This document shows, in pieces, positions 559 to 41,731 of a stretch of 64,000 bases of DNA. Position 1 is the first letter of the stretch. Each line of letters begins with the position of its first letter. Source of the stretch: Ruditapes philippinarum (taxonomy: Eukaryota); assembly GCF_026571515.1 (NCBI RefSeq), contig NW_026863691.1, positions 372,001 through 436,000 on the forward strand. The letters are read 5' to 3'. The notes below the pieces were generated by a model that saw only the letters and a list, made by a program, of their open reading frames with translations, searched no databases and was not told the origin of the DNA. The translations under genes and the position numbers were made by a program.

Positions 559-3500
559 TTAATCCATCGTGTGCCTGACTGCTATTTGGTCGTTGTTTTT
601 GTTCCCTACAATCTGTTTATTGTGTCTCATATTATCATTATTGCATACATTGTCTGTTTTCTTTGCAGTTTGAATTATCACAACTTCTCCCTTTTTGTAG
701 CAACCGCCACCATTTTGAAGACAGATACTAGGCCAAACAACTTCGTAGATGGTACCTTCTTCTTTCATCGGATCTATAACTGGCTGTTTTGGTGAGTATA
801 TTCTAAAATGTTCAATACATTCCGAATGGTTTCTGCCAATAACATCAAAATCTAGTCTTAATGGAGGGTTTGAAACTATTATCAACCAGCAGCAATCGAT
901 ATATTTGTCGAAAAACTTTTTCAAATCATTGACTACCTCTGCTTTATTTGCCCCGACATCGAAAGCACTTATTTCTTCTGTCGTCTTTAGTTTTAACCAT
1001 ATTTCCTATAAAAGCAGAGAAAATCGCAAATATCAGGTTCTTGCAACTGTACACAAAAAATTAAGTCAGATCAAACCGGCTTAGCTGCCCTCTTGGTTAA
1101 CGCAGCGCCCAAACACTTATATTATATTCATAGAAAACCAGCATTTGCTGATGAATAGAAGTAAAAACCACAAGAAAGCACTCAAGAATACACAAAGAGC
1201 GAACAAATGCTATTATCCCTTTCCAACAAAATTTTCAAGTAAAGTTCTAGAATAATTTTCTTATGGAGCGTCAAAAACAAATAACACATTATTTTAGCTT
1301 GTAACAAAACATTTCCTATTACTCACAATTTTTCATGTAGATTTTCATAAGTCTAAAGTCTTTTTGTAAATTAAAAACTGAATTATACATAATACGACAA
1401 TAATGATAATAATAATAATAATAATAATAATAAAATTTCTAAAGTTACTTACATGTACCAGTCTATTGCGTACTGCCTCTGTCCGGGCATATTTTCTTCG
1501 TAAAGAAAATAGTTCTGGATTCTAAAGAAACATGTAAAATAAATGTACATTACTATTACTTCTTAAACATAGAATATAGTACTTAAAATTAGATACATTT
1601 TAATTTTGGAAGTATCAAATCAATCCAAGCTTTTAGTTTTTAGAACTTAATATCTTTTTTCCCGGTTGGGTTTTACGTCGTACCAACGCAATATAGGTCA
1701 TAATTATGGCGATTTTTCAGCTTTACTGGTACAGGAAGACATCATGTGTCCAATTGAACATTATTTCAGGCACAAACGAGCACCGATAGCTTTGTCAAGT
1801 GAAGAAAATCTTTGAATTACCGTAAGTTTTAGAAAGAAATCTTACATCTTCTTGAAGAGGTGTTGGTTCATTTTCAGTAAGCAAGAAAAACAGACGAATC
1901 TGAGAATCAGCAGCTTTTCCACATTCTTCATAGACAAACTAAAAGTATTCAAATATACAGATAATATAATTCAAAGTAAAAAGCCAATAACCTTTCACAA
2001 AATGAATGAAATAATAAATGAAAATGAAAAACAATTTACAAAAAGATTTATCAAAACAACTTCTTTTCAACCTTGTTACTTTACACAAGTTGGTTTAAGC
2101 TAAAAATACAGCATATTGTGCTCTTATCCTTTCATTACAATGGAATAATTCATGTTTATACTTTTTAAAATAAATATATGTTTATACTATTTTATGATTC
2201 CATTTTTTTTTTCTATCATATATCACTATAATACTTTGCCATATACATGGAAGTATTATTTCTAACAATCGCAACTTCCTGGCACTTTCCGTCAAACTTC
2301 GGATAACAACCTCGAACACAATAGTAAGAATACGCAGAACGGTCTAACCTACGCTAAGAAAACTAAACATGTAAACAAAAAGTGATTTAATGTTAGGAGG
2401 TGATTGACTAAGTTTACGTCAGTATATCTAGTAAAAGACCAACTAAATTAAGTAAATTTATAGAGAAATAAAAGTAATCAGTACATTTTATATAGTTATG
2501 ATCATAGTTGTTGAAAACGAAAGTAAATAATGCTTACAATAATTCGTATTTGGTTATAATTGTACATCAGTGGGCATTTTTGAATTGATAATGATTGTCA
2601 GACATATTTTCAATCATTATTTTACCGAAAGGAAAGTCTATTCATATTATATTTAGGTTATTATGAATAATAGCCGATATGTTCCGATTGCATTTTTAAT
2701 GGGCTTACAATTATCACGATTACCTTCATCATCTGTGTTAGGTGATGTATAAGTTCAAGCTCAGTTAATGAGACGCCCAGCTTTCCTAGTCGTCTAGACA
2801 GATAAACCCAGTCATTGTCATAAAGTTTATAGAACTTCTCTGTGATGTTTGAGTTGGAGAACTCGTCATTTAAATTTTCAAAATTTCCTTTCTCTTCCAT
2901 AACCTTTGCCATTTCAGTTGTTATAGCATGCGACCTGTAAAGGATTTTTTTGTTTGGTTTTACGGCGCACCAACACAATTTACTTCATAAGGCGCCGAAA
3001 CAAGAATGATAATTTTGTCTAAACTCGGGTGATACAAACTACCTGCTGAAGCTAAGAGATGCTTCGAAACTATTAAGTCGCCTCTTAGGCTCGGTCCCTG
3101 TAATTCTGATGCCTCAAATCATTAAAAGCAGCCCTAAGGCGACAAAGAAAGGGGTGGGGGCAGGAATGGGGGTGGTTGTAAAGGAATTAAAGGCTTTGTT
3201 TGATAGACTTCCTATGCTGTAATGAATCGTTATCATTACACTTACATTGAAAACAACTGACATGACAGACTAATATTGCATGACGAAATAATTAAAAAAA
3301 TGAAATTAAAAAAAAATCATATCTCGGTCTTAAATGTTTACCCAAACTTAAAAGTGATTGTGTCTACTAAAACAACTACTTGGAAAATTAATATATCGGT
3401 GAAATTACTTTATGAGGAAAGATTTTAATTTCCTAAGTAGGTCGGTCATGATTTCCCGTTAATGATCTCTTTAAGTAATTACGTATTCTTCAATTTTAGT

Positions 3501-4656
3501 TTCAATTTTGCATTATGTTCTTCGAAGTACTTATTATCATTTTATTACCGCCTTTCAAGTTCACGAATTCGTTGTTTAGCCTTTTTATTTGTCACTTTTA
3601 AGCGTTCTACTTCACATTCCCTATCCTTTATTATTTGTTCCATTTCATCAATCACATCCATTCCGCCAATTTCTTCCCTCTGAAATATAATATAGTAAGA
3701 CAATCATTTATGGAAGAATCACGTTAACTTTTATAACTTTTTTTAAATAATTTTTATTTCCGTATAAATTCTTTTTATGTCCTGTTTTAAGAAATACTAA
3801 ACGCGTTAATATAAGGTCTAAATTGTTGAGTCAGACATCCGAGCATGTTTATACTGTTGACTTCTCAGATATATATCTTTCATACTAAAATCCTAATACT
3901 ACAAAAAAATTGCAAGAAAGTTATATAAAACGAAGCCGAGAAAGAGTAATATATTGAATGGTGTGAAAAAAGTGTTTTGTTTATTCCAGTAAATTATTAG
4001 TATGTATTTTACCATCACCAATGTCTAGGGCAACATTTATTTGAAGAAATGTTTATATTTGTTATATGCTAAAAAGTCTTTACATTGTACATTATTCGGT
4101 ACTTCCAAATTTCTAAACTGTATCTTAAAAAGTTCAAAAAGGTAATAACCAACCCTTTGACGTTCATGTTTGTCATGCCTTTTATGTTCACTGTAAAAGA
4201 ACAAATGTTTAATCAGATCTTTGTTGTTTTTAATTCCTTAATTACGTTTAAGGCATTAATAAAATATCACCATATTAAATATCAGAATCAAATTCAAGCC
4301 GCTGTTTTGAATAGGCTACATGATAATATTAATATAGGAGGAGCTTATACACAATATCATTGTTATGGGTATTTTTTTTTAAAAGTTTAAATTGAATGGT
4401 GTTTGCAAATAAATGATACAAGATATTTAATATTCTAATCCCTACTTTAGCTACTGCTTAAGTTGACAATCTCTTATTGAAGGCATGCAAATTTTCAATC
4501 TAGAGAGTCACTTGTAAGGTTCAAATACCTTGAGCTTTCTTCCACCAGTGTCGTTCCGCCCAAACCACCGTGATCAGAAGCTGAACATGGGCCAATCTCA
4601 TCTAATAAAGCTTGAAATTGGTCAGTGTCCTTAACACAATCAGCACGTAGTTCCAT
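559..4656 (-). CDS. MIEAP/SPATA18-domain protein, paralog A (~371 aa, 7 coding exons)
   Basis: Exons 4529-4656, 4154-4190, 3549-3679, 2724-2934, 1846-1938, 1453-1521, 559-1005; GT/AG boundaries and compatible phases give one open frame. Coiled coil (EMEQIIKDRECEVERLK...ELERR), Mieap-type motif NITEKFYKLYDNDW, C-terminal CCWLIIVSNPP...EVVWPSICL...KKGEVV. The 5' exons are less certain than the last five. Confidence 0.82.
1665..1787 (-). mobile_element. SINE-like element fragment in a paralog A intron
   Basis: Reverse-complement similarity to 16286-16455 (gacgtaaaaccc tail, ataggtca, gaagac, ttatttcaggcac). Confidence 0.65.
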
Positions 4657-4827
4657 ATCTGTAATACATGCGTAGTAAATGCATAGAGTACATGACATAC
4701 TGACGAAAAATACAATGGTATGAATTCCATAATTAGGCAGTGTGGTTATTACAAAATAATGTATTTTATTTTAACAACATCACTTCCTGCATTAATATGT
4801 ACTTTATAAAGAAAGTGTAACTTAGTA

Positions 4828-4960
4828 CGCCCGCTTAGCTCACATAGGATTAGTAATCTAGGTTGGGTGGTTCGATCCTCAATCGAGACGACATTTATCC
4901 GTGACAATTCTCGGACACTGAGTCGTATGGTCATTTGTCTCTCCGCTGAGACAGATATCA
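4828..4960 (+). mobile_element. Degenerate tRNA-derived SINE head
   Basis: GCCCGCTTAGCTCA (A-box-like) followed by GGTTCGATCC (B-box-like); no full cloverleaf. Confidence 0.45.
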
Positions 4961-8047: not shown

Positions 8048-11000
8048 CTATGCCTGTTTTCCCCTTTTGACAACAACAACATCACCTTTCATATAAATTG
8101 CAGGACCTTCTTCGAGTTGCACACATGGCCAAACAACTTCACATATTGTACCTTCAATTTTAGTCATATCCTCGACAGGTCTTTTAGTAGAATACATTTT
8201 AAAGTGGTCATCACAGTCACTAAACATTTTACCGACGACGTCAAAATCTAGAACCATTGCTGGATTCGATACTGCCAAAAGCAAGCAACATTCAATGTAT
8301 TCGTCCAGAAAAGTCTTTAATTTTTCCCTTGCTGTACTGGTATTATCCCCGGAGCATAATGCACCCACATCCTCTGTTTGCATAAGCTTATCTGTAATCT
8401 CCTGAAATTATCATTTCTTGCATAATTTCTTAAAAAGTGTAATTACGTCATTTTATAAAACGTCAATAAATACACTGTCGGTTTGCTTAAGAAAGTACAT
8501 GCAAATTAAACAAAAAATTTAAATCAAATAACAATATGTTAGTTAAAAATTTTAATAAGAAAGGCATATTCTATTTTCATTTTTAATCATGAATATTGAT
8601 AAATTACAATGTATATGAATATTTCAATAAAGTTACGAATAATAAGATTTTTTGACATCAGAAAGGTGTTGAATGAAACAATTAATATTCAATTACCTGA
8701 ACAATTCTTTGCTTTACATAATCTCCAAAAACATATTTCTTGAACATAATTTTGGCATCTGCCAGCTGAGAAGGGATGAAGTATATTTTATTAAAACATA
8801 TATTCAAGAATTCATTGTTAGAATTGTCGTATGTCGTATGTTTGTCAGACTTGTAGTGTCAAAAAGCATATGCTCTTTTGAATTAATTTTTATGTCGACA
8901 AAGAATTGCAAATAAGTAACTAGGCATTATCTATTTCCTATTGACTTTTGACAAGACACATCTATCAATTAGAATGTTAGGTCTTCTTTTGTATTTGAAA
9001 TGGACCAGAAAAAATAAACAATGAAAAGGTTGAATCTGATTTTTTTTCGTTATTTTACTGTGAAAATAGAACTGAAATAGTTCTTACATCTTCATCTATA
9101 GGGTTGTCTTTTAGACTGTTGACATGCAGAAGCACACATAACTTCTCTTCTGCCAATGTTTTACACTCTTGATATGCCATCTACAATTAAGAACAAATTC
9201 TTGTTATTATTGAAACTGAATCATAAATATTTTGATGCTATAAATTACATAATTTGCCATATTTACTTACTTATTTTACTTTTCTTATTAGGTTATAAAC
9301 GTATCTTTTTTATAAAGAACATAGAACCAACACAACAAGGCAACAAAACAAAGTAAAAAAATGACCACAGGTCTCTGAAAACATTAGTCTGGGAGCAACA
9401 TTTAAACGTATTATTAACATCTTGAACATTAAATAAGTGAAAGTGAAATATTTTGTTTATAAAATACCTTCATTAAATTCGTGATATGTGATATTCTCTC
9501 CACTTCAGGCATGGCTTGACAATTTTTTAACATCCACTTTATCAATAATACCCATTTTTGAGAGTACAAGCATTCAAATCTTTGGGATAGTTTCGTATTA
9601 TTTACTTCTTCATTTACATCCTCAAAGTTTCCTTTTGAATCGTTTATTCTTGACATTGCTCTTGTCAATGACATTGATCTGTGGACATAATAAGACATTT
9701 TGATAAGGTATTACCATCCAAATTTAAAATTCTTACACGAATATTAATTTATCAATCCATGTTATTAAGATATGGTGTTATGTTTTTTCCACAATGATAT
9801 TGGTATATGTTTAATTATTCATACCGTCTTCTAAATCGTCTGTTTCGATATCAACTTTGTACTTATGTATTTTGCATCAACGAAAGAAAGAAAAGAAATA
9901 AAAGCATTTCCTAAAAATAAAAATGCTTTATTCCGAGCTTACCGATTTTCCAAATCCTTGTTCTTTTTTCTTTGTTGTTCACATTCCTTCCTCAGATGTT
10001 CACATTCTTTTTCAAGTGTTTTATATTGTTCTTGTAATGCTTCATTTTCATGAGTTATTTGTAGCAAATTTGCATCATATTCTCGCTTTAGTTCCTGTGT
10101 ATGGTAGGCTTCATTCGGTCTTTCATTTTGCTAAATTTGTAAAATAGATTATATTATAACAGCCACATAATTCTAAAGTATATGTTTTTTGTTGTTATTA
10201 AATGGTTTTGATATCATTCTACACTCAATGATTGAATAGTTGGTAATAATATTTTGTCTCCGAATCTGAGGTCACTAGATGATAAAGGAAAAAAAATAAT
10301 GAACCATTACAAGAGTAAATAAAGTCATACTAAAAACAATTGTTAAAAATGTAGAAATGAAGCTGTAAATATTTTAACATACCCTTTCTAATATACCATG
10401 TCTTCCACCACTTTGGGCAGTATTTCCTTCATATCTGTTTCTAATGTAAAACATTAAACCATTTATACATACACTTCATTATTATAGAATAATATCCTGT
10501 AAGTATAATTCAAAAACATGTCCGCTTTCAATTTTAATCATAGTAAATTTAAGTACCTATATTTTGCTATGATTTAAAAGAAACCATATAGAAACGATTA
10601 TATATTTCAGAAAACAAGAAAGAGCTCCTTCCATCTCTTACCGACTTTGTAATTCATATTCTTCTCTTACATTCTCTGGCTGGCCAACATTATTGCTTCT
10701 TCTCCCGGTACTTTTATTTTGCTGAAAATGCAAAAAGGATATTACAGTTAAAACAAATAATACTTTAACATATATTAGTTATTTTTGCTTTCTCTCTCCC
10801 CAAGAAAATCTATATTCTAGGGGAATCTGAGCAAAGTATTAATGATAATAATGAAAGAAATGTCTAAAACATTCGATTATTAATGTATCATCAAAAATAG
10901 GTGATAAAATTTGTAAATTATAAAAAATTTAATTGCAATGGTTTTATTAGGCCAAAGGACACCATACCTTTTCTTCATTCCGTCCATTTTGAACTGTTTT

Positions 11001-16911: not shown

Positions 16912-19900
16912 TCACACATCTGTAACCTTTTTATTTACCGACGAATTTTCATCAACGGCTGTACGGTTCCCTTTGTCTTCCTTTGATACAAAACAAGTGC
17001 AATCAACAATGCCGGAATCTTCAACGGGTGTCGAACCTATTGATACTAAGAGGGCGTCGCCTTTTGTACAGAACACGGAACCGTCGGCATAGTACACACA
17101 GGGCCACACAACCTCATATACACTGTTCGTATCTTTTGTTTCATCTTTGATACGCTCTTTCGCTGAATAAACTTTGAAGTGTTCCTTACAATACTGTTTT
17201 CCAACAACATCAAAGTTCAAAGCTAGACGCGGAGTGGAAACAACCATCACCCAGCAACAATCTACAAATTTGTGTAAAAATTCCTGTAGCATTTTCTTTG
17301 CTTCTTCAGTTTTGTCCTCTATTTGAAACCATGGTATTTCTTTACCAATAAACACTTTTTCTAACACCTCCTGCATATAATTAGGTGAGATATGTTATTG
17401 TTAAGACATGTGAGAAGCAAGAATTATAGATATATAAATCTAAGGCATTTTCTTGAACTTTTATAAAGCAATATATATTTAAATAGCTTCTTAAAGAATA
17501 CTGAATGCTGTTAAAGTAGTAAGTTCAAAAGAAATATTTTTCAATGTCTTTATAAAATATACGCACCTGACTTATCCTTGCCCTTGCAGTATCTTTGATT
17601 GCATATTTCCTTCTCAATGCATACAGTTCTTCATGCTTAATAATACCAATAAAAGATTTTTTAACATTACAAAACATTCATAGTTGCTACATTTGGTAAG
17701 AAAAGCAACAATAATTCAATTTTTACACTGTATAATTTCTATTATTTTTTTCATTAGTATCTGCCTGGCTGATAAAAGACTATAAATCTATTTTCATTTT
17801 TGGGTTAAAAAAGCAAAACAACTATAGTTCGAGTAATGTAATCGGATGTCTGGATTTCAGCAGATAACAATCTTTATAAATACCTCTTCATGGGATGGAC
17901 TACCCTGTGATTCACTCAAAAGCATAAACTGACGGAGTTGTTCGTCTGCTAAACAAAGGCATTCTTGATAACTTTCCTAGAACCAAAAGACAATGTTCAC
18001 ATTGCTTTCAATCTATAAAACGTGATAGAATATATAAAGAATCAAAAGATCTTTTAAAAACATTTAGACATCTCATTACCGTTAAAAGAATAGGTAATTG
18101 TAAATGCAAAATTATAAGCATAATTAGCAAATGATAGTAAATATATCAGTAAGACAAGCCTGTTGGGAAAACGATGATAAAATAGTTGAAACTATTATAA
18201 CTCTTTTTTTCAACAAGTATTGAATCGAATCTCCAAACCTTTAAAAGTAAGTTTATACTGAGTCATGAAATGATAATACCACTTAAACGTTTCAGTAGAA
18301 AAACATAAAAATAAAAAGTTACCACCATTTTCAGTAGACGTCAAAATGTCTTTCTATTTATATGTTATAAATATTTTTAACATATAAATATCCGGAAAAA
18401 AGTATCGCTCGGAAGCATTTAAAACAGCAAAACATGAACATTGCAGACTCGGTTTAATTGAGTATGTACATGAGGGATAATGAAAAATGTAACACTCCCC
18501 ATGTCCCATAGCATAGCTTGAACTATGTCAGTTAGCTTTATTTTAATGTAATAGGTAAATCATATTGAGATATTGTTCCTTGTAAAAGTACCTTCATCAA
18601 TGACGTTAGACTCTGAATTATTTGATCTTCCAATATTCCCTGTTTTGCTAGCCAAATCGATAACTTTGCCCAATCATTGCTATATACATTGCTGAACTGA
18701 GTTATGATATTAATTTTCGACAAACTGTCATTGGTACTTTCAAAGGCTCCCGATGTGTCCATCACCTTCGCCATATGTTTAGTAATTTCACTTGAGCTAA
18801 AAATTGAAGGAAAGATACAATATTTATAACAGTAAAAATTCCAAAACATAATTAAAGTGACTTACATTTTAAACTACTTACTTTTTCATTAAATACACGC
18901 TGAATACTGTAACTTTATTTGATAAAACAAAAATGTAATAATAACCAAAAGTAAAGCACAAAAAATATGTTACCGTTTTTCTGCTGTTTTACTTCTCTCT
19001 TGAAACTTCTTGATAATTAATTGTTGGTCTTTGATTTCATTTTGTTGGTGTTTGATTTCATTTTGTAATTGTTTTATTTGGCGTTCCAATTTATCGTTAG
19101 TATCAAGAACATCATCGAGGACTGTGTTTTGTTCTGTCGGATTTCCGTTTTTAGCCATCAGTTTCTTTTATATAGAATATATAGAATAAAACGAAAAGTA
19201 TGTTAATCTTGCAACACACATTTTATACGACTATTCTTTCTTTATATAGCTTCAGGACTAAATTGGTATCCAGGTTTGTAGCTATCCTGTTGTTTTATTA
19301 AAATAATTATAAAAAGAATAATAAAATAGAAAACCTTGAAAACCAAACAAAACATAAGTTAATAAGAACAAAATTTGATCAGAATTTTAATACCTGTCTT
19401 AATTCCCACTTTAATCATTTAATTAATATTTTCATATTTTACATATTGGCGATAAAGAGTGTATACGAATTTAATATTGGGTTAAATTGAACAACTTACA
19501 AGAACAATATGTCTGCAAGTGTGCTATATAATTACTTACAGATTGTCCTCTGTTCTGTTGTGATTTTTTTTCTATCCTGAAATTTAATTGTAAGAAAACT
19601 AATCAATATCAAGTTGTATATCAAAATCAAGTGCTAACTGATATCAGAAAATAATCTTTCAATGTATTTTGCTGGTTTAACGAGCCTTCATTTCAATAAA
19701 ACATTGATGTAAAGATGAATTGGAATTTTTCATATTGAACACATACATAAATGATATTTTTACTTATTTCTTAGTTTGTTTTAATTAATCTTTTATTACG
19801 TTGATAAGAGCACATATGTTTCTTTGTGTTAACTTTCATACTATTGACCTATCTTTTATTGCAAAGGTGATTAGACATAAAAATTATCTATTTCCCCTGT

Positions 19901-30200: not shown

Positions 30201-30900
30201 TTGATGACAAAATGGATTATATTATCAAGCAATGTATACTTCAGTTCTTTCAGTGCTTTGATTTTTCTTATGGCTGTGTTGAAAGTCTTCATGAAGATTT
30301 AGAGAGTATTAGTTAAATACTCATTCTAGCGGAACTTCTCAGGAGTTCTGTTTTCAAATCAAACTAGGGAAGTCAGTTTTATTACTACATGTAGTATACA
30401 ATAATGATACCTGTGGCAGCTGTATTTGATAAACTAGCACGCACAGGCTTACATTTTAAAATTAAAATAAAAAGAAGTACACAACGTAAAGTTAAGCTAG
30501 TGATTCACAGGAACAATCTTAGTATTAATATTGATAAACCGACTGTTAAAACAATTTGACTCTAACCAGAATAGAGGCGAGAACATCAGCATACATGTGA
30601 CATTAAAATAACATTGCTACACTTATCTACATTCAAATGAAATTAGTAAAGCATGATGTGCTTTTAGTGTTTAACTTAACGAATAAAACGTCCACAGATA
30701 AAATGATATTGGCCAATGTGAAATTAAAAAAAGATCTAATTCTTACTGGCTCATTGAATTTTTACATGGCAAAAAGTACAAAACAACATTTGCCGTGTAA
30801 TTTAAGCTTAATGGACAGCAAAACTTTTATTTCTTTGATCTGTACATAAAATGTAGTACATCATCATATACAGCATAGTTTCTGAGTAACAAATACATTT

Positions 30901-31134
30901 GAGCCGCGTCATGACAAAACCAACATAATGGGTTTGCGACCAGCATGGATCCAGACCAGCCTGCGCATCCGCGCAGTCTGATCAGGACCCATGATGTTCG
31001 CTATCAGTTTCTCTACTTGTTATAGGGTTTGTAAGCGAACAGCATGGATCCTGATCAGACTGCGCGGACGCGCAGGCTGGTCTGGATCCATGCTGGTCGC
31101 AAACGCATTACGTTGGTTTTGTCGTGACGAGGCT
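30901..31134. mobile_element. MITE (TIR GAGCCGCGTCATGACAAAACCAAC)
   Basis: Terminal and internal inverted repeats; second copy at 58753-58943. Confidence 0.88.
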
Positions 31135-32534
31135 AATTTCAATGCAATCAATCAATGCAATAATATAAAAGTAAAACACTAATGCTTGTAATCAAACATA
31201 CGTTGGTCGTTATCAAGCCTTAGTTAAATGAAGTTGAACAAATATAAAAAATAAGATAAAGTCGAAATTTTGTTTTATCATTGAACATTATTCAATATGT
31301 TTTAAGTTCTAATACTCATAGCTTTGAATATAAAGGCTACGAATACTTGAATAACATGGGCATAATAAGAATAAAAAGAAAAATTCATCTTCCAAGGCTC
31401 TTACAGAACAACATTGGCATTAGCGTTCATTTCTATGTATTCTATTCCTCGTCCATCTTCCACTTAGTATTCTTAGGTTATGTGTAGAAGTTCTTAATCT
31501 ATTATTAAAGGTGCAAGGAACATACCTAGATAATCTTCCTGATTGAAAGGTTTGCTTACACACTTTATATAAGTCTATCACAGAACTGCCGTATATGAAG
31601 CAGACAATAATTCGTTGTCTAAATATCGGAATAAGGTTTTTAAAATCAATGATAGAAGGTTTTTAAAATCAATGATATATGGGTTATTTCAAATATTTGT
31701 AAAACCATAGTCACATAAAAGCTTTTTAGCATATGCTACCCATTTATCGTGTAGTGCTAGCTGATAAACCCAGTACTTAACAATGCGTATATAAAGTGAT
31801 ATATTCAAAGCTCTGCATGAACACTTACAGAACAAGTAGTATTTCTTACTGACAACATCGTTTTACAAAATTTCAAATATAATCTTTCGATTTGTTTTGA
31901 TTTTGTAAAGCACAAGAATCAAATACCCGGCATCATAAGGTTCGTTTAAAATAATACTATTTACAATTTAATAGCAAAGCGTTAAGCGCATTTAACGCTT
32001 AACCGGTATCGCATTCCTGATTAAATATTTAATTAATAATAATAATTATGTTAAATGTCCACTTTTTCAACAGTATTATCATTACATGCCGAAAAACTCG
32101 TTTTTTTTAAAAAAAAAAAACATTTTTTTCTAAATAAAACAATTTTAGATTTATGTATATTTACTTCTATCATGATATATCTGATAAAAGTGATAATCCA
32201 TTCAACTGTGCATAATGTTGAAATAAATGCGACTAGAATTTATTTGACAAGTGTCTGTCGTTCAATTTTTAAAATTCATGTCTTTATACAAGGCATATTA
32301 TTTCATTCATTTTAGATGAAAATCTGGAAAAGGAGTGACATCTCGAAATGAAAAAAAACAACGTCGCCTCCCCCCCCTCCCCCCCCCCAAAAAAAAAACA
32401 AAAAAAACAACACACACACAAAAAAACCCACAAAAAATCACACATGTATTTGTATTTTTAGGTGTCTTCATATAATTTATATCTTCAAACTGTTATAGTG
32501 TTATGAATGTGTTTCCGAATTATGCTTGCATTGT

Positions 32535-35500
32535 TTAGGTTTGTGAAAATGCATCTTTTGTTTTATTTGTAATCACAATTGCGTCCCCTTTAGTATAAAG
32601 TTCTGATTCAAATTTTAGGTGGACCGATGGCCAAACAACTTCATAAACTGTGCCTGCAGTTTTGGTAGGGTCGTCTATATTTCTTTTTAGAGATAAAACA
32701 GAAAATTGGTCTGCACACTCGCTGTACATCTTGCCAACTACATCAAAGTTGAGAGACATTGTAGGTCTCGACACTGTCATAAGCCAACAACAATCTATGT
32801 ACTCGTCTAGAAATGTTTCTACTCTGTCTAAAAGACCGTGTGTTTTGCTTTCTTGACAGTGTTCAAAGAGAGTCTTCTCCACATGAACTTTATCCTTTAC
32901 AATCTAGATAAAAATAGATTCAACACATTTGATTTGCATGAAAAGTCATAAAAAGATGTTTGAAGAACCAAAAAAAAAAAATCAACAACAAAGATTCCTT
33001 TCATTTTGAGTAATGGCTTGATAAAACACTACTTCGCGCAAAAAATGTTATAACATAAATGTGTTTAACATACATCTTGTAAACGATATTACAATTTAAA
33101 TGCTTTTGCTTTCCATGTTACTTACATTCTTTACTTGGAGTCTCAAAGTATCAGTCTGTGCGTACTGTTTTCTAAGAGCAAAGAGTTCGGGATGCTGAAA
33201 TATAATTTTCTAAAATCTTAATTAAACAAAGGACGTATATACATCTATTTTAGCCATATATTATATCAAATTTGATAAAAGTTAAAATGCATGCATTTCA
33301 TTGTAGAAAATAAATTTATTTTAGACCTTTTTACCTTTTCAGATAAATTAAAATCAAATTGTAATTTTGACAAATTAAGACAATAATAGGTATTTTTTTA
33401 CATAAAATATCAAGCTTTTAAAAAAGTATTTCTTAAACAGAAAATCAATTGTGATGGCATCATTTACCTTCTCATACATTGGTATGTCGTCACTTTCGTT
33501 AAGAATCAAAAACTGCCGGACTTGATTGTCAGCCATGTTGAGACATTCTTTGTAGCATGACTTAAATTTAATAAAAAAACATGTGTATTATAAGATAACC
33601 ATTCATAAAACCTTTGATGAACGGTATCATGTGTTTCATGGAAAGTATTACTTATACATCAAAATTTACCTACATTGTGAATGTGTTAAGTTTATGGAAT
33701 GATAAAAGAGAATTAAACATCGTGATTATTAATACATATACTTATATTAATAGAAAATAAAATACAAAATACAAATATATCATACAACTTTTATAACCAC
33801 TTTCAATTTATTTCAGTTTTATGCTTTAATGATATCATATCATTCGTTCAAATAATGCCTATTAATTCGGTAAAATAAGTCCTGCATAACAAAATGTATC
33901 ATTCATTCTCAAATCAGAAAACGAAATATTGCAACTAAATAATATTCAAATTGATTCAAAACTGTAAGATTTAATAATGAATGAAAGAGGACCGACAAAT
34001 AACCTTTTTCCTTGTCACAATAAACTATGATTTCTTAAACTTTATAGCATTGTGTTTACGATTATATATGTATGAATAATAAGACACAATAAAAATAAAC
34101 TGACAACAATTATTCTACCTTAATCAGCAGTGAAAGGCATTGAATAATCTTAACTTCTGGAATCTGTCTGAATGTTTGCATCATCCATTTGCACAGTTGA
34201 ACCCATTTATCATCGTATAACAATTTGAATCTTTTGGCAATTTTTGAGGTGGAAAGGTCATCGTCACAATTTTCAAAATGGTTGCTGTTCTTCATCTGCC
34301 TCGACAATAGTTTGGTTAACTCATTTGTCCTAAAACGTTTATTGCAAATGCACTAAATACTTCAGTTTTTTTATTATCAATATGCAGTTGCATTTTGGTA
34401 AATTGACGTATCAATTTGGGCAATTAAAAAAACATAAGCAACAATTCAAAGAAATGCTAATGGCTTCTTTTAGACATTTGTTTTAATTATAAAATATCTT
34501 TCGACTGATATGTGAATATAGCTTTTACCACATTACAACTGATTATAACCAACATTGTGTGGTATGAAAAATAAATAACAACAAGTCATACATATATATT
34601 ACATGAATCACATTAAAAAGGGGGGGAACAAATTGCCTATTATATCCAACTTTACCGTCTTTCTATTTCTTTCTTTTCCTGTCGTAAGCGAATATTCATC
34701 TTTTTAAGCATTTCAATTTGTTTGTCTTTCTCTTTATCACTCATGTACTTATCATTCACTGGACGATCATCTACTGTGTTCTTGTACCTCTCTTTTTCTG
34801 CAGATGATCTTCTGTAATACACGATGTAATACACGAAACACATTTAAAAAGGTTTTAAATGAAAAACATATAACATTATTTCAATTCAATTTCCGTTTAC
34901 AAGTTTCTCAAACTGTATCGATTATGAAAACAAGTTTTCTGTCACCTGTATCGTCCATTTCGATAAACAAAATAGGATTCTTGTCAGTGTTGTATCTCTT
35001 TTCTTTAAATTACAATAGAACTATGTCTTTACAAATAACGCATAAGTTGTTATCATTAACTTAAGCGATATGTGCTAACAAACTTGCTTTCATTTACTTT
35101 ATAATTGTTTTGATGACGTATATAATGTGCTGTCATTGTTCTGCTCATGTTCAGTGGGCCGAAAACTTATAATCGGTCACATGACACTCATAATCAGTTG
35201 AAATCATAGACAATTTCGTTACTATATATAGTAACAAGTGTAATGGAAATCAAAACATGTACAAGCAAGAATATGATATTTTGTAAGAATGAACTTGTTA
35301 TATATGCTAAAACATGCAATTAGTAATACCTATAATCGCGGGAAGAACTTGAATATCCATCATCCCGATATCTTGTACCCGGCGGCGATTCTTCTTTACG
35401 ATTGCTAATTTCAATGTCATTTATTTGCCATTGATGCTTTTCTGTACTAATTGGTGGTTTTGACCTGGCATCAATTTCGGCATCAACTTCCACCCTTATA

Positions 35501-36615
35501 TGCTGGTCATGAATACTATTCTCAGCTGTTAATTGATGTGTTTGTTTTTCCAAGGATAAACTATCCCTTGAAGACACATTAGAAGTTTTGGGATTTACAT
35601 ATGATTGCGGATCTCCCTTGGCAAAGCCAGATATATTTTGCTGTTGTTGTTCTTGACTTGAATTGTTTAAAATATCTGACACAACTGAAGAGTGTTGTTT
35701 TACATTGTTTAAATATTTCGTTGGACTATCATAAATGATTCTGTCACGTGAATTGTCTGAAACATTTTCAGACCTAACATCATCATGCAAATGTGATTGG
35801 TGTCTGGCATTATTTCTATACGTTTGGTATTCGTTGGTTTCATTGCCATTAGCACATGAATTGTCTTTATACTTGTATTCACCTATATCGCCATATGCAT
35901 TTGTTTCGGTTGTAAATTTCTTCGTTCCCTTTTCTCCTGATTGCCAATATTGCGTATGAATGTCATGTTCATCGTTTTTATATAGATGCTCATCAACATA
36001 ATTTGAACTTGATGCTCTATGGTGTTTTGCACTACTACAGCTTATATGACTGCCAGATAGTGTGGAAATAGTGTTACTTTTTGGCATTTGATTAGTGTAT
36101 GTTCTAGAGCTAAGCGTTTTGCTTTTATGTGTCTCTCGACTTTCATCACCATGTATACTTGCTTTTGGAGAGAGGAGCCTACCACCACTCGTGTGATGAA
36201 TTCTATTTGTATCCGAATTATAATTAGTTATCACGTCTCTGTCTGTGCCTACAGAAGTATGTCTCATTGAACCGTTATTCAGGCGTGAAAGATTGCCTAC
36301 GTCTTGCATTTCACCACCATGATAACCAGTGTGATATGATTGTGAATTGATTTGACTTCCTCGTTGGTCTGCTTTTCTTTGAGAGTATGGCAAGGAAGTG
36401 GCAAAATTACTTTTTTCTCTTACTTTTAAATTGCTATCATAATTTTCGAATGCTTGGTCTGTATTGGAAGAAGGTGCTTTAACACTTCTAGATAAGTTCC
36501 TTCCCGAACTAACATGACTATTATCTGAAAAAGGTCTATGATGTCTTTCTCTTCCTATAGGGTTCAAAGGGTATGCATACACATTAGAACGGCTGTTATA
36601 ATGAGATCCTGCCAT
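32535..36615 (-). CDS. MIEAP/SPATA18-domain protein, paralog D, long S/H/N-rich N-terminus (~727 aa, 6 coding exons)
   Basis: Exons 35330-36615, 34656-34811, 34119-34329, 33468-33560, 33126-33194, 32535-32903. Motifs KIAKRFKLLYDDKW and DCCWLMTVSRPTM...EVVWPSVHL...KGDAIV. A likely non-coding first exon has its donor at 36968/36969. Confidence 0.85.
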
Positions 36616-36968
36616 TTTGTCACTGCCTTTGACTACTGAAAATATGTTAGGTTCATTAAAAAAGTGCAAACATTTTTATCTAAATTTGAATTGTGTGTAG
36701 TTAGTTTGTATTGAAATTTAGCATTCGTATGCAAATAAAGATAAAATATGATAGTGATAACAAACACAAATCCGCACTTTATGTGTATGAACAATAAAAG
36801 AAGCGTGTAAACATACAACTCAATATACACAGTATAAGTATAAGCTACACAGTATACAAGCTACAGTATATGTATGGTATAAAATCAGTGTCAAAGGATG
36901 CTTGAAATTCAAAATATATATGAAATATATGTACATGGTACATGTCATGATAAAATCGGTTATCTTAC

Positions 36969-37697
36969 CTTGAAAAAGAAACTTTGGAACACTTCCAAAA
37001 TAACGTTACATGATTGTAAACACACGTATCCAAATAACGATATCGAATCAATTGTTCGTGTACACTACAGTCACGCTGAGCAGACGAATCATTAGTTAAC
37101 AGTCTGATTTCGATGTAGAACTAAACCTCGTGTTATAATTCACGCAACAACTCTTTAGCAAAGAATATTTTTTGTTATGCTATTTCTTATATGCAAGTTG
37201 TTAAAATTTGATCAATGATACAACAATTTAAATTTAACCCACACCAGGTACGTATTACATACGTACCTGCCAACACTTAACTTGCAACTACAGTACATAA
37301 GCTTATTTTAAAATAAGAGTCGATGGTTTAATGTCACTTATGCCAACATGTATATATTTTGATCAGTGTACAGTATAAAATCTTATTTTTTTCTAATATT
37401 ATGTACAAGTTTTATATAAAGGTTGAATTATAAAAATCTTAAAAGGGAAGCAGGCATAAAGAATACTTTTTTAAGTATATCAACTATACGACGTGTAAGC
37501 TATTTATACCTTATCTGGTTTTCCACTTTTCGTTTATGCGTAGATTTGCAGAAAATGTAATTTCCAATATTGCAGCATCAAGTTTCTCTTTTAAAAAGAG
37601 CATAAGTCTTTGTAATATTTGAACGGATTTGTTAAAATATGAATAAACATTTATAGTGGAATTTTATATAGTTACAGATTTATTTAAAAACATCAAA
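36969..37697. promoter_or_regulatory. Putative bidirectional promoter / 5' UTR region shared by paralog D and HSPA12
   Basis: Divergent genes. Minus-strand donor at 36968/36969, plus-strand donor-like CAG|GTACGT at 37247/37248, acceptor TTACAG ending 37677 just before the HSPA12 ATG. Confidence 0.5.
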
Positions 37698-40600
37698 ATG
37701 ACAGATAATGATACAGGGATTGATGCAGGGCCAAGTCGAGATGACCCTGTAGATGCCGACAGCATTACTGTCGATACGATTGATTGTGTAAGTAACAATA
37801 TTGTATTTTAACGAAGCTGCAGGTGCTCATTTTACTTTAAATGTTGAAATTATATAACATTTTGTTATCGTTTATTTTTTTATCTTGTTTCGTTTTTTCA
37901 TTGGCAACAGTCAAAAGTAGGTTACAACGTTCTACAACTCTTATATTTATAACATAACTAATTTAATCATAGCTCATTCTCTAACAATTTTTTTTAAAAT
38001 AGTTTAGCTGTAGATAGTGTATATTTATGTCTGAATTGAATGCAAGATCGATCGAAATAGCATATACATGTAGTTTGATATTGAATAATTCGGTTACCAA
38101 TCATTTTTGAATGCTAAACTATGTTCTGTTTAGATATCTTTATCTGTGTGATAATATATACGTCTGTACCTATAACATACTTGATAAACAATTTGCAAAT
38201 GGCTTTGACTAACTGGTATGATATCGGGCAATTTTACACATTATAAAAAATACCACAAAGAGAGTAGAATGTTGCATATTTAAACAAATCGTTTCAAGGT
38301 CAGCTGTGTGTATAGCATAATTATAACTATCTTAACAAAAAAATTTCCTTGTTAACAAGTGTAGTCTTGACAGAGGTTTATTTACTGTACAGTATACTTA
38401 TTAATTCACAGTGCGATATGAAAAATATAAATATGATTTAAGAAGATATATTCATTTGAAACAGGATGAAGAAATCACACCCCGTTTAGTAATAGCCATC
38501 GATTTTGGGACATATGCGTGTGGTTATGCCTTGCAATGGAGATCCGACTATGAAAATGCAAACTGCCTCGAAAGCATCAAGGTTCCAACAAAATGGTCTG
38601 CAAGTGGATTTTGCACGAGAAAGACACCTTCATGTATACTACTAAAACCTGACAAAAGCATTGCCGAGTTTGGGTATAAAGCTGATTTTCAATTCAGCAA
38701 AAATGAGTCGCTTCCTGAGAGAAAGAGACCAAAAGACTGGAAGGACTGGTATTTCTTTCGCTTTTACAAGATGCGACTCTACACTGGAGAGGTAAGAATA
38801 TGATATCATGTGAACAATCGAAATAGAAAATAATTAACAGCATGCATGCAACAGAAGATAATTTGTATCATTGTGTTAATTACCTAATTCTGTGAAAAAT
38901 TTGATTCCACGGAAGCAGTGAAACACAATATTATATCGATATCGCAAACTCGGTTACGTGAAGCAGTATTTATGTCTAAACTTTGATTAAATTTCTAGGT
39001 CTGACTGCATGAGGTATTTAACTCCCGTTAGGTATTTTGCTTATTTTTTCAAAGTCGGTTTTTTGTCCTTTTGTAGGAACTTACAGTGGATACTCCAATG
39101 GAAGCCGCAAACGACAAACATTTGCCAGCAGTTGAGGTACTGGCAAAAACTATAGAGTATCTGAAGGATGAAGCAATCAATAAACTACGAGAAGATGGTG
39201 TTGTTTATCCAGAGGAAGAAACCAAATGGGTTCTTACTGTTCCTGCTATTTGGAATGACCCAGCTAAACACGTTATGCACGAGGCGGCAGAAAAGGTAAT
39301 TATCTAAGTGCTTGCACATGAATCAGAAATTTTTTGAATTTCTTGCAAAACGTTTTCATCATAAATTTATTATGCATATGATGTTTATAAAGAAACTATA
39401 TTATGATTAAATAAATATATCCATTTTAGCTGGAATAGAATTGAACTGAAAATGTAACTTTATTTGCCAGGCTGGAATAAATGGGAAAAACTTGTCAATA
39501 GCACTTGAGCCTGAATGTGCTGCAATATACTGCACTAAGCTTCCTCTTGATAAAATGGATGTCGCCATTGGCAGTAATGAAAAGACAAATATTGCAGCTC
39601 CTGGTCAAACACTGATGATTGTAGACATGGGAGGTAAAATATGTGGTTCTTTATTTATCGCATCCCTTTTCATTTTGCAGTTAAAAATGAACTGATAATG
39701 AGCATAGCATTGTTGAACAGCATTGTAGTATAACAGTGAACAGAATTGTAGTATCCTACAACATGTTTTACAGGCATTTTTACTTATAGAGATATACAAA
39801 TCTCTTTTCCTTTTAAATAATTTGCCATACCAGTATTCAATTGTTTCATATGTTACACTGTTTTTCTTTGAAGACCGACCGTCAATTATTTTACTGTTAG
39901 TGTAAAGGATTAACTATTGCTATACTATAATCTGTGGTTTATTTTTGTCGTGATCATTCTGTATCAAACCGGTTAAGTTTTATTATTACATCTCTTTTAG
40001 TCCCCCATTAAAAGAACTACATTCAAACCACATTGGGTCAATGTAATAAAAATCCAATGTGAGTGGAAAATGCTTGTGTATGTCCATGTGTGTTTGTGTG
40101 CGTGGGTCTCTAGGTGTATGTATGATTGTATGGCCTTCTCTTATACTGTGGGTTGTGGAGTTTAAACATCTTCAAAATCTGGAAGAAGGAAATCCGTTTA
40201 TACAAATGATAACAAAAACAAATGAGAAGAGTAGCATATAATTCACATCTTTGTACTGATTACAGCATTTTGTAAGACATTTTTAACCTCTATCTTCATT
40301 TTCCGATAATTCTACATATCTATAATATATCTAATTTGTCATAATAAGATTGTAAAATGTTTGTTTTATGTTCTAGGTGGAACTGTTGATATAACAACTG
40401 TAAAAATAAATGAAGACAAGACAATGCAACAGGTTTATAAATCATGCGGGGGTCCTTGGGGTGGTACGAAGGTCAATGAAAAATTTGAAATGTTTCTGGC
40501 AGAGTTGATAGGAAGAGAAACAGTCAGAACATTCGTAGAAAAGCATGCAATTGACTACCATGATTTGCGAATGGATTTTGAAAGCAGAAAAAGAGAGGTA

Positions 40601-41731
40601 TTTCTGATGACAATATATTATCATTTTAAAATTTAAAAATCATTGGCTTTAAGACTTTGCATTATTCAAATGCATAAATAAACTATGTATTTAATTATGT
40701 TACTTTGAAAGTTTTCTCAGCATCAAAAAATAAAAATACTTTTATTACAGTGATTGTAATCTTGAGACTTTTCTTTATAAAAAAATATTAAGGAGAACAC
40801 TACCCTCAAATACTTATTTTATTGCATGGAACAAATGTGATCTTTTTGTTTTATATTTTTACCTGGCAATTGTTTGTTTAAACAGATGAAAGGATCAGAT
40901 GATCAAATACCAATCAAACTCCCAGATTCACTCCGACAGTTATGGGAACGTGCAGAAGAAAAAGAAATCGATGAGATTCTTGAAGAAAAGAAAGAATTTG
41001 GAGAAATCGAATTTATGACAGGGCGATTATTCTTGGAAGCTAAAATAATTCAAAGGTTCTTCCAAGAAACCATCGATGGCTTACATAAATATATAAATGA
41101 AGAAGTTTTTGCAGAGGGGTCCAATATTTCAGTAAACTCAATTATATTGGTTGGTGGGTTTGCTGAATCAAGTTATGTAATGCAAAATGTGAGAGAAAGT
41201 CTCCGTTCTCGTAATATTCCTGTAGTGAGGCCTCAATTACCAGAGTTAGCCGTATTGAACGGTGCTGTTCTTTTCGGTCAGAATGAAAAGATTGTAACAT
41301 CACGGGTTATGAGGCATACTTATGGAATTGCAATGACAATGGAATTTGTTCCAAACAAACACAAGGCGGACGAGAAATATGAGTTAGATAACATGATAAT
41401 GGCAAACAATGTATTCAGAAAGCATGTTACTATCGGACAAACCGTTCAAATAAGTGAATGGATTTCTTCAAAGGAATATTACCCAGAAAATGAGAGGGAC
41501 TTAAAAACTACTGTTTTCGTTTTCACATCTGATTCCGAAGATCCTGTTCATACAACAGAAGAGGGATGCAAGTATATCGGCCAGGTTGATGTTGATTTCG
41601 GATATGGCAGAAATTTTACTGCGAGGAAGGCAGTGAAAGTGGAGTTCAAATTTGGGGGAACAGAGCTTAAAGTTAGAGCCATTACTTCGACTGCCAACAA
41701 ACCACACGTTAGATATTTGAAAGTACAATGA
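37698..41731 (+). CDS. HSPA12: Heat shock 70 kDa protein 12-like (atypical Hsp70), ~621 aa, 6 coding exons
   Basis: Exons 37698-37787, 38465-38791, 39077-39295, 39471-39633, 40377-40597, 40886-41731 join in frame. HSPA12-type motifs AIDFGT, KTPSCIL, WVLTVPAIW, ALEPECAAIYC, DMGGGTVD, GGPWGG, LVGGFAES, HTYG, FGGTELKV. No EEVD tail. A versus B orthology cannot be assigned. Confidence 0.93.

What the first reader, a model, noticed from the sequence alone, without database searches (positions are those of the whole stretch)
559..41731. Candidate module: atypical Hsp70 (HSPA12) head-to-head with an array of four GrpE-like MIEAP-domain genes
Seen: four co-oriented MIEAP-domain paralogs are followed directly by a divergently transcribed HSPA12, with ATGs 1083 bp apart. 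Established: Hsp70 ATPase cycles use nucleotide-exchange factors; GrpE consists of a disordered N-terminus, coiled coil, helical bundle and beta-head; HSPA12 is a divergent Hsp70 family expanded in bivalves. I know of no dedicated HSPA12 exchange factor. Inference: the paralogs have a GrpE-like domain order and may be dedicated, diversified partners of the adjacent HSPA12, forming a eukaryotic dnaK-grpE-like cassette with possible stress or immune function.
Basis: partly seen in the sequence, partly recalled or inferred. Interest (0 to 1): 0.88.

Follow-up and report, generated by a model that had tools for sequence, protein, structure and literature searches.

The report
HSPA12 gene paired with GrpE-fold Mieap genes
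In a clam genome, an atypical Hsp70 gene (HSPA12) shares a promoter region with a row of Mieap-domain genes whose predicted fold and docking resemble the bacterial Hsp70 co-chaperone GrpE, which suggests a first candidate partner for a chaperone with no known function.

Summary
Four co-oriented minus-strand Mieap-domain genes (last exons at 559, 8048, 16912 and 32535) are followed by a divergent six-exon HSPA12 gene (37698-41731). The two ATGs lie 1083 bp apart. RNA contigs leave at most about 490 bp untranscribed between the pair. The genome is Ruditapes philippinarum.

The interpretation passed every computational test I could run.
- **Linkage recurs.** A mirror-image cassette lies just beyond the window. 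Head-to-head pairs also occur on at least four other contigs. Of about 78 Mieap clusters, 8 lie within 25 kb of an HSPA12 gene, against 1 of about 105 C1q control clusters. Accession numbers in Mercenaria and locus tags in Mactra place the orthologues next to each other.
- **The fold is GrpE-like.** For the last-exon domain, ranks 1-4 of 48,161 PDB representatives are GrpE (Z 5.8-7.7). There is no sequence similarity to GrpE.
- **Docking is predicted.** The HSPA12 protein with the neighbouring Mieap-like protein scored ipSAE 0.77, against 0.33 for the best control. The contacts centre on ATPase lobe IIB.

Binding and nucleotide exchange have not been measured. Most HSPA12 and Mieap genes in this genome are not linked. 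First-stage notes of this scan flagged similar modules elsewhere in this genome (s1-811300, s1-792527). No paper in the searched library links Mieap to GrpE or to HSPA12.

The parts
559..3667 (-). Mieap-like gene A. Mapped exons: 3572-3667, 2724-2951, 1849-1974, 1459-1533 and 559-1002 (last exon, stop at 559). The 5' end is not mapped. Its nearest named relative is Mercenaria LOC128547988.
   Evidence: tblastn (P0058/P0004 55-58% identical); weak Pfam MIEAP hit.
8048..9701 (-). Mieap-like gene B. Mapped exons: 9438-9683, 9058-9177 and 8048-8404 (last exon). The 5' exons are not mapped. Its nearest named relative is Mercenaria LOC123528986 (66% in the last exon).
   Evidence: tblastn; alignment.
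16912..18798 (-). Mieap-like gene C. Mapped exons: 18559-18798, 17878-17976, about 17528-17638, and 16912-17376 (last exon). The 5' exons are not mapped.
   Evidence: Pfam MIEAP E 2e-4; representatives search; tblastn.
32535..37061 (-). Mieap-like gene D (LOC132723028, P0235, 727 aa). CDS exons: 35329-36615, 34655-34816, 34119-34331, 33468-33581, 33123-33197 and 32535-32903. It has a 5'-UTR intron at 36633-36968 and a non-coding first exon reaching at least 37061. The protein has a 429-residue disordered first exon, then a coiled coil, a helical bundle and a beta domain.
   Evidence: 100% identity over the large exons; Pfam MIEAP at residues 508-700, 24.6 bits; RNA joint 36632/36969; last-exon model.
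37062..37550 (.). Shared divergent promoter region. This is the only stretch between the outermost transcribed bases seen for gene D (37061) and for HSPA12 (37551).
   Evidence: Transcriptome contigs. There is no heat-shock-element enrichment in the window (25 matches against 24 expected).
37551..41731 (+). HSPA12 gene (P0116, 621 aa). The 5' UTR starts at or before 37551. CDS exons: 37698-37787, 38465-38791, about 39077-39295, about 39469-39633, about 40376-40597 and about 40884-41731.
   Evidence: tblastn (98-100% apart from an over-extended exon-3 hit); five GT..AG joints in spliced contigs; Pfam HSP70 47 bits; catalytic-type residues D43, K132, E227, D264 and T269 invariant in 86 relatives.

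Best explanation
The window holds one arm of a conserved clam gene cassette. An HSPA12-type atypical Hsp70 gene is transcribed away from a tandem array of divergent Mieap-domain genes. The nearest pair shares a promoter region of at most about 0.5 kb.

Each Mieap-like protein has a fast-evolving disordered N-terminal region, a coiled coil of about 60 residues, a helical bundle and a small beta domain. The last two helices plus the beta domain have the fold of the C-terminal half of GrpE.

I infer that these proteins are dedicated co-chaperones of the neighbouring HSPA12. The conserved Mieap module docks across the ATPase cleft, mainly on lobe IIB with further contacts near lobe IB. There it acts like a nucleotide-exchange factor or a cycle regulator. 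The variable N-terminal regions would give each paralogue its own clients or location, in the way BAG proteins are modular.

Shown: gene structure, transcription, linkage, predicted fold. Inferred: binding, exchange activity, division of labour among paralogues.
For: Linkage:
- All 8 members of the window's Mieap subfamily lie on this contig. Five sit on the minus strand before HSPA12(+), and three on the plus strand after a mirror HSPA12(-).
- Head-to-head pairs also occur on C2299, C14781, C9370 and C6085. These fall in four separate branches of the HSPA12 tree.
- 8 of about 78 Mieap clusters lie within 25 kb of an HSPA12 locus, against 1 of about 105 C1q clusters (Fisher p 0.005). The expected number is about 0.6. 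Seven of the 8 pairs are divergent.

Other species:
- In Mercenaria the orthologue P0117 is XP_053378122. The Mieap-like proteins are XP_053378123-129 on the same chromosome.
- In Mactra the locus tags are ACF0H5_014785 (Mieap-like) and ACF0H5_014787 (HSPA12).

Fold:
- The last-exon model has pLDDT 81.
- VIA-align ranks 1-4 of 48,161 are GrpEL1 (Z 7.7), E. coli GrpE (Z 6.6, rmsd 2.9 A over 80 residues), and the Geobacillus and Thermus GrpEs.
- Foldseek's top 10 are all GrpE.
- A GrpE cluster also appears in the ESM Atlas structure search.

Docking:
- ipSAE was 0.77 in all three runs. Controls scored 0.33, 0.02 and 0.01.
- The best-defined contacts on HSPA12 are residues 325-389, which map to lobe IIB.
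- Interface residues on the Mieap side are more conserved than the rest (p 0.008).

Context:
- Both genes are transcribed in the same samples.
- The Mieap and Hsp70 families expanded in parallel in bivalves (PMC8382680).
Against: - There is no sequence similarity to GrpE.
- All structural Z-scores are below 8, a range the tool calls common.
- On the full-length model the GrpE match (Z 7.3, rmsd about 10 A) barely exceeds plain coiled coils (Z 6.1-6.5).
- The helical bundle is larger than GrpE's.
- A pass in the complex test may reflect memory of solved DnaK-GrpE complexes. One control, with the partner kept, reached 0.33.
- The HSPA12 side of the interface is not more conserved than the rest of the protein.
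- About 90% of Mieap clusters and most of the several hundred HSPA12 candidate loci show no such neighbour.
- The mirror HSPA12 has a decayed last exon with 9 in-frame stops.
- Cross-species adjacency rests on accession and locus-tag order, not on coordinates.
- Two transcriptomes are not a test of co-expression.
Confidence: 0.5

Rival explanations
1. The genes are co-regulated neighbours that do not bind each other. They share a divergent promoter because both families serve the same stress or damage response. The Mieap-like proteins act on their own, for example in condensates or mitochondrial quality control like vertebrate Mieap.
For: The divergent promoter is at most about 0.5 kb. Both families were reported as parallel bivalve expansions tied to intracellular damage (PMC8382680). 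Most family members are unlinked.
Against: The GrpE-type fold is specific: ranks 1-4 of 48,161. The complex test passed at 0.77 against 0.33. Conserved Mieap motifs sit at the predicted interface.
Confidence: 0.22
2. The Mieap module does bind HSPA12, but not as an exchange factor. It could be an adaptor or scaffold that recruits HSPA12 to targets, a lock on one nucleotide state, or itself a client.
For: The docking prediction says nothing about kinetics. The disordered N-terminal regions are highly variable: gene D's 431-residue exon finds only itself in 5.8 billion proteins. The bundle is larger than in GrpE. Reviews describe HSPA12 as lacking the helical lid and of unknown function (PMC13580251).
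Against: The predicted contacts lie on lobe IIB and near lobe IB. These are the lobes that known exchange factors pry apart. The catalytic residues of HSPA12 are invariant, so a nucleotide cycle is expected.
Confidence: 0.18
3. The neighbourhood arose by chance or by block duplication. Two very large, tandemly expanding families happen to lie side by side, and segmental duplication then copied the arrangement.
For: There are at least 149 Mieap and several hundred HSPA12 candidate loci. The mirror cassette and C2299 could be copies of one ancestral block.
Against: The expected number of pairs is about 0.6 and 8 are observed. The C1q control gave 1 of about 105. Seven of 8 pairs are divergent. 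Linked HSPA12 copies fall in four separate tree branches at 30-43% identity. Neighbourhood is kept in Mercenaria and Mactra.
Confidence: 0.08

Closest known systems
GrpE / GrpEL1 nucleotide-exchange factors of DnaK and mitochondrial Hsp70 (Pfam PF01025; PDB 1DKG, 9BLS, 4ANI, 3A6M)
   Same: The order of parts is the same: long helix, helical bundle, C-terminal beta domain. The last two helices plus the beta domain superpose on GrpE, which takes ranks 1-4 of 48,161 (Z 5.8-7.7). The predicted docking is on the Hsp70-type ATPase domain at lobe IIB and near lobe IB. The gene sits next to its Hsp70 gene, as grpE and dnaK do in many bacteria (from my own knowledge).
   Different: There is no detectable sequence similarity. 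The bundle has about six helices rather than two per subunit. A long disordered N-terminal region is added. The partner is an SBD-poor atypical Hsp70. Neither protein shows an obvious targeting signal by eye, whereas GrpE-like factors are described only from bacteria, mitochondria and chloroplasts (PMC12987570). Dimer formation and exchange activity are untested.
Vertebrate Mieap / SPATA18 (Pfam PF16026 MIEAP)
   Same: The domain family is the same: 41 of 47 relatives hit PF16026. The ESM Atlas structure search gives TM 0.72 to a mollusc Mieap cluster. A coiled coil precedes the domain.
   Different: The window's copies are a divergent subfamily that scores at or below Pfam's cut-off. They are tandemly multiplied and HSPA12-linked. 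No Hsp70 connection has been reported for Mieap in the searched library.
BAG-family co-chaperones of cytosolic Hsp70
   Same: The proposed logic is the same: one constant module that binds the ATPase domain, joined to variable regions that set clients or location. This comes from my own knowledge of BAG proteins and is an analogy only.
   Different: The fold is unrelated (BAG is a three-helix bundle) and there is no sequence relation. This comparison was not tested here.
Plant GIL1/IRK-interacting C-terminal domain (PF24994, DUF641 proteins) and unnamed fungal proteins
   Same: These are the nearest predicted-structure neighbours of the Mieap domain outside animals (TM 0.60-0.66).
   Different: This is a lead from one search only, with feature scores of 0.77-0.81. 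I know of no chaperone link for them, and I did not examine them further.

Membership tests
GrpE (PF01025) | Sequence match to the GrpE family profile | tested here: not met
   PF01025 is not among the 25 commonest Pfam families that 47 relatives match at E up to 10. No GrpE chain appears at E up to 10 in a profile search of PDB sequences.
GrpE (PF01025) | Helical hairpin plus compact C-terminal beta domain | tested here: met
   Model of gene D's last exon: VIA-align ranks 1-4 of 48,161 are 9bls_B (Z 7.7), 1dkg_B (Z 6.6, rmsd 2.9 A over 80 residues), 4ani_A (6.0) and 3a6m_B (5.8). Foldseek's top 10 are all GrpE, with probability up to 0.99 and E 0.014-0.28. All Z-scores are below 8.
GrpE (PF01025) | Long N-terminal helix followed by a four-helix-bundle contribution | tested here: inconclusive
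   The P0011 model has a 59-residue helix followed by a bundle of about six helices. Whole-chain GrpE matches score Z 6.7-7.3 at rmsd about 10 A, little above plain coiled coils.
GrpE (PF01025) | Homodimer | not tested
   A coiled coil is predicted, but no oligomer prediction was run.
GrpE (PF01025) | Binds the Hsp70 ATPase domain across lobes IB and IIB | tested here: met
   In silico only. ipSAE was 0.77 in three runs, against 0.33 for the best control. Contacts at 325-389 map to lobe IIB by alignment to Hsc70 and DnaK. Contacts at 52-82 lie near lobe IB by motif offset, which is an inference.
GrpE (PF01025) | Accelerates ADP release from its Hsp70 | not testable with these tools
   This needs a nucleotide-release assay.
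MIEAP (PF16026) | Pfam match above the gathering score | tested here: inconclusive
   The window's proteins score below the cut-off of 27 bits: P0235 24.6, gene C's last exon 21.9, gene A's 16.5. Same-locus and orthologous relatives score above it: P0011 35.4, P0008 33.4, P0003 29.6. 41 of 47 relatives match.
MIEAP (PF16026) | Same fold as annotated Mieap proteins | tested here: met
   The ESM Atlas structure search gives TM 0.72 to a cluster in which 98% of members carry PF16026.
HSPA12 (atypical Hsp70) | Hsp70-type ATPase domain with catalytic residues, and no full substrate-binding domain | tested here: met
   PF00012 scores 47 bits, covering profile positions 30-398 of 599 only. D43, K132, E227, D264 and T269 are invariant in 86 relatives. 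Orthologues are named HSPA12A/B-like.
HSPA12 (atypical Hsp70) | Groups with HSPA12 proteins in a tree | tested here: met
   P0116 sits in a clade with 99% SH-aLRT support, together with Mercenaria, Mactra, Dreissena, Mya and Sinanodonta HSPA12-like proteins.

The most novel reading that the evidence does not exclude
The Mieap domain is, across animals, a GrpE-fold co-chaperone module dedicated to HSPA12-type Hsp70s, possibly including human SPATA18 with HSPA12A/B. The two largest ancestral bivalve gene expansions, Hsp70 and Mieap, would then be two halves of one diversified chaperone/adaptor system.
Probability: 0.3. Interest if true: 0.9.

Novelty: new variant of a known kind. Interest (0 to 1): 0.8.

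Why it matters
A 2026 review calls HSPA12 a chaperone of unknown function and names no partner for it (PMC13580251). Its large expansion in bivalves is unexplained.

The biochemical activity of the Mieap domain is also unknown, and it expanded in parallel (53 genes per bivalve species against 0.6 in other molluscs; PMC8382680).

GrpE-like exchange factors are described only from bacteria, mitochondria and chloroplasts (PMC12987570).

If the pairing is real, it would do three things:
- It would give both families a testable mechanism.
- It would add a further type of Hsp70 regulator in animals.
- It would suggest a direct experiment for the human proteins SPATA18 and HSPA12A/B.

Tried and rejected
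Cross-species linkage rests on accession and locus-tag order.
I therefore could not inspect the head sides of 13 further Mieap arrays, nor the rest of contig C3712.
- A second HSPA12 search with a different paralogue found no new linked contigs.
- Sequence routes to GrpE failed: Pfam at E up to 10 and a profile search against PDB sequences.
- The heat-shock-element scan gave 25 matches against 24 expected, with none in the shared promoter.
- The ESM Atlas has no model for the canonical three-domain Dreissena Mieap protein. GrpE likeness of canonical Mieap is therefore untested.
- The HSPA12 side of the interface is not enriched for conserved residues.
- The tree test of 'linked' as a clustered label is uninformative, because the linkage state of most rows is unknown.
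- Literature searches found nothing that links Mieap with GrpE, Hsp70 or HSPA12.
The database proteins P0116 and P0235, which match the window's exons, stood in for the spliced products.
Full report
**What the window is.** The window is G000:C12178:372001-436000, in a 1.41-Gb genome of about 32% G+C. The plus-strand Hsp70-like gene matches RefSeq 'heat shock 70 kDa protein 12B-like [Ruditapes philippinarum]' (P0116, 621 aa). The match is 98-100% over its exons, apart from an over-extended hit at exon 3. P0116 lies on a contig of 534,739 bp, which is the length of C12178. The genome is therefore the Manila clam or a near-identical assembly of it.

**Check of the observation.** A library-wide phmmer search with one minus-strand ORF (16912-17376) found 57 relatives. 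The full-length ones are 300-540 aa and carry the matched domain at the C-terminus. Pfam calls them MIEAP.

tblastn of these relatives on the window marks four minus-strand genes with one shared exon pattern. I call them A (559-3667), B (8048-9701), C (16912-18798) and D (32535-36615, plus a 5' UTR). Their last exons are 30-41% identical to each other, so these are old paralogues.

Gene D is LOC132723028 (P0235, 727 aa), 100% identical over its large exons.

Spliced transcriptome contigs confirm all five HSPA12 introns. They also reveal a 5'-UTR intron in gene D (36633-36968). The outermost transcribed bases of the two genes are 37061 and 37551, so at most about 490 bp separates them. Contigs cannot fix true transcript starts, so this figure is a bound. 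Both genes are present in both transcriptome assemblies examined. That shows transcription, not co-regulation.

P0116 and P0235 came from database searches and stand in for the spliced products.

**Is the neighbourhood more than chance?** Both families are very large here. Pfam MIEAP gives at least 149 matches, with 202 candidates of which 150 were scored. HSPA12 last-exon queries give 136 and 115 scored matches, from 338 and 470 candidates.

A profile of the window's own last exons finds a subfamily of eight genes, all on C12178. Five lie on the minus strand before HSPA12(+): one of them about 15-19 kb before the window's start, and four in the window. Three lie on the plus strand after a second HSPA12 on the minus strand, at C12178:439745-443577. 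The locus is thus a mirror pair of head-to-head cassettes.

That second HSPA12 is the orthologue of a second Mercenaria gene (P0119). Its exons 1-5 are 67-90% identical to P0119 and intact. Its last exon carries nine in-frame stops.

Head-to-head pairs also occur on other contigs:
- C2299: Mieap(-) 21039-23794 and HSPA12(+) 27411-31704, plus an upstream fragment pair.
- C14781: Mieap(-) 133510-137685 and HSPA12(+) 145683-153275.
- C9370: Mieap(-) 135715-138989 and HSPA12(+) 153248-160689.
- C6085: HSPA12(-) 126207-131554 and Mieap(+) 134573-138660.

In a tree of 90 HSPA12 sequences, the window's gene, Mactra P0123 and the C2299 copy fall in one clade with 99% SH-aLRT support. That clade also holds Mercenaria, Dreissena, Mya and Sinanodonta proteins. 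The C9370, C14781 and C6085 copies sit in three other places. The arrangement is therefore spread over deep paralogues.

By my count, 8 of about 78 Mieap clusters lie within 25 kb of a known HSPA12 locus, and 7 of those 8 pairs are divergent. Random placement predicts about 0.6 (Poisson P about 4e-7, or about 0.01 if the background is five times richer). A control family, C1q, gave 1 of about 105 clusters (Fisher p 0.005).

The other side of this result is that about 90% of Mieap clusters, and most HSPA12 genes, show no such partner in the lists. The HSPA12 lists are incomplete, because only part of the candidates are scored.

- **Mercenaria.** The orthologue P0117 (75-89% identical per exon) is XP_053378122.1. 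Two Mieap-like genes closest to genes A and B are XP_053378123-126 and XP_053378127-129. All lie on the same 81.9-Mb chromosome.
- **Mactra antiquata.** A Mieap-like protein (P0016) and the HSPA12 relative P0123 carry locus tags ACF0H5_014785 and ACF0H5_014787 on one contig.

Consecutive numbering usually follows gene order. This is good but indirect evidence that the neighbourhood is older than the split of these clams.

**Fold.** An AlphaFold2 model of P0011 was built from 47 sequences (pLDDT 80, with 254 residues at 90 or above). P0011 is the third gene of the mirror array. The model shows disordered ends, a 59-residue helix, a bundle of about six helices, and a beta domain.

Against the PDB, Foldseek's best hits were GrpE structures, though weak (E 0.04-1). 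VIA-align put E. coli GrpE first of 48,161 chains (Z 7.3). However, the rmsd was about 10 A, and the score was only slightly above plain coiled coils at Z 6.1-6.5. On its own that match is not convincing.

I therefore modelled gene D's last exon alone: 122 aa, two helices plus the beta domain, without the long helix (pLDDT 81). The four best of 48,161 representatives were all GrpE family:

| Rank | Chain | Protein | Z | rmsd (A) | Residues aligned |
|---|---|---|---|---|---|
| 1 | 9bls_B | human GrpEL1 | 7.7 | 5.0 | 98 |
| 2 | 1dkg_B | E. coli GrpE (residues 116-195) | 6.6 | 2.9 | 80 |
| 3 | 4ani_A | Geobacillus GrpE | 6.0 | 3.8 | 87 |
| 4 | 3a6m_B | Thermus GrpE | 5.8 | 4.2 | 82 |

The next row (Z 5.2) covers helices only. 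Foldseek's top ten were all GrpE, with probability up to 0.99. A bacterial GrpE cluster also appears among structure neighbours in the ESM Atlas (TM 0.42/0.48). It ranks behind Mieap itself and behind plant and fungal proteins carrying PF24994.

Sequence methods see nothing. The likeness is therefore one of fold. I cannot tell whether it reflects very remote homology or convergence.

**Docking.** The one complex job used P0116 (full length) with P0235 residues 450-727. It scored ipSAE 0.77 in all three runs. The controls scored 0.33 (partner kept, HSPA12 replaced), 0.02 and 0.01. There were 150-162 contacts and the partner's pLDDT was 80. The tool's verdict is that the model supports binding but does not show it. 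That mark was reached by 51 of 78 solved complexes and by 2 of 108 mismatched pairs. The tool also warns that a pass may reflect memory of solved similar complexes.

The best-defined contacts on HSPA12 are residues 325-389. By alignment to Hsc70 (P0116 168-351 = Hsc70 119-283) and to DnaK (P0116 387-457 = DnaK 287-362), these lie in lobe IIB. Further contacts at 52-82 lie just after the first phosphate-binding motif. I place them near lobe IB by motif offset, which is an inference.

On the Mieap side, the interface takes in several of the family's conserved positions: F499, E500, N501, D504, S507 and T508 at the start of the domain, then E539, P652, S676 and K710. Interface residues are more conserved than the rest of the region (0.515 against 0.431; permutation p 0.008). 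The HSPA12 side shows no such enrichment.

Residues equivalent to Hsp70's catalytic set are invariant across 86 relatives. A nucleotide cycle is therefore plausible.

**Reading.** The best-supported explanation is a chaperone/co-chaperone cassette. A constant GrpE-fold module docks on HSPA12's ATPase domain. It is preceded by a coiled coil and by a disordered region that differs completely between paralogues. Gene D's 431-residue exon finds only itself among 5.8 billion proteins.

Whether the module speeds nucleotide exchange, holds one nucleotide state, or simply tethers HSPA12 to targets cannot be decided by computation. The rivals are co-regulation without binding, binding without exchange activity, and chance plus block duplication. 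They are scored separately in this report.

**What is known.** Reviews state that HSPA12's function is unknown and that it is greatly expanded in bivalves (PMC13580251). They also state that GrpE-like factors occur in bacteria, mitochondria and chloroplasts (PMC12987570).

Regan et al. 2021 reported parallel ancestral bivalve expansions of the Hsp70 and Mieap orthogroups (68.1 against 4.4 and 53.1 against 0.6 genes per species). The passages I read do not mention physical linkage or structural likeness (PMC8382680).

Five literature searches found no paper that connects Mieap with GrpE, Hsp70 co-chaperone function or HSPA12. The library holds open-access papers only.

First-stage notes of this scan flagged the mirror cassette (s1-811300) and a similar module on another piece of this genome (s1-792527). 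These are unchecked notes, not independent evidence.

**Verdict.** Nothing has been measured. I rate it a new variant of a known kind (an Hsp70 with a GrpE-fold partner), of high interest.

Noticed in passing
G000:C12178:439745-470365 (3.7-34 kb beyond the window's end; loci L001-L004): A mirror-image second cassette. HSPA12(-) lies at 439745-443577 and is the orthologue of Mercenaria P0119. Its last exon carries nine in-frame stops, while exons 1-5 are intact. Three Mieap-like genes follow on the plus strand, and the third is P0011 (LOC132723034).
   Followed up: partly
G000:C12178:353325-357457 (about 15-19 kb before the window's start; loci L005-L006): A fifth co-oriented Mieap-like gene of the same subfamily, 62% identical to Mercenaria P0008 in its last exon. 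The array is therefore longer than the window shows.
   Followed up: partly
window 45825-47212 (+): Reverse-transcriptase ORF (Pfam RVT_1, E 1.4e-16), followed by a 305-aa ORF with no family match. This is a retroelement remnant in the spacer after HSPA12.
   Followed up: no
window 50037-58222: A block of satellite-like tandem arrays: 145 bp x 8, 51 bp x 21.6, 163-169 bp x 4, 27 bp x 31, and 145/289 bp x 9. G+C and A/T skew are higher here. The overlapping ORFs at 55434-56080 lie in the 27-bp array and are probably not genes.
   Followed up: no
window 24956-25074 and 28287-28427: Two arrays of a 21-bp unit that are roughly reverse complements of each other, about 3.3 kb apart, between genes C and D. 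They may be the inverted ends of a transposon. G+C-rich 22/43-bp arrays lie at 22694-23225.
   Followed up: no
L008-L009 (G000:C2299:12981-31704): The order is Mieap(-) exon, HSPA12(+) fragment (18374-19467), full Mieap(-) gene, then full HSPA12(+) gene. This looks like a tandem duplication of the whole head-to-head unit, with one copy decayed.
   Followed up: partly
P0235 residues 500-727 (window gene D): The nearest predicted-structure neighbours outside animals are plant GIL1/IRK-interacting C-terminal domain proteins (PF24994, DUF641) and unnamed fungal proteins, at TM 0.60-0.66. The Mieap fold may therefore be eukaryote-wide.
   Followed up: no
P0049 and P0050 (hits): A Dreissena protein carries three Mieap domains in 1108 aa. 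The Mieap genes next to HSPA12 on C14781 and C9370 match it best. A fish NACHT-domain protein gave a weak match to the Mieap last exon.
   Followed up: no
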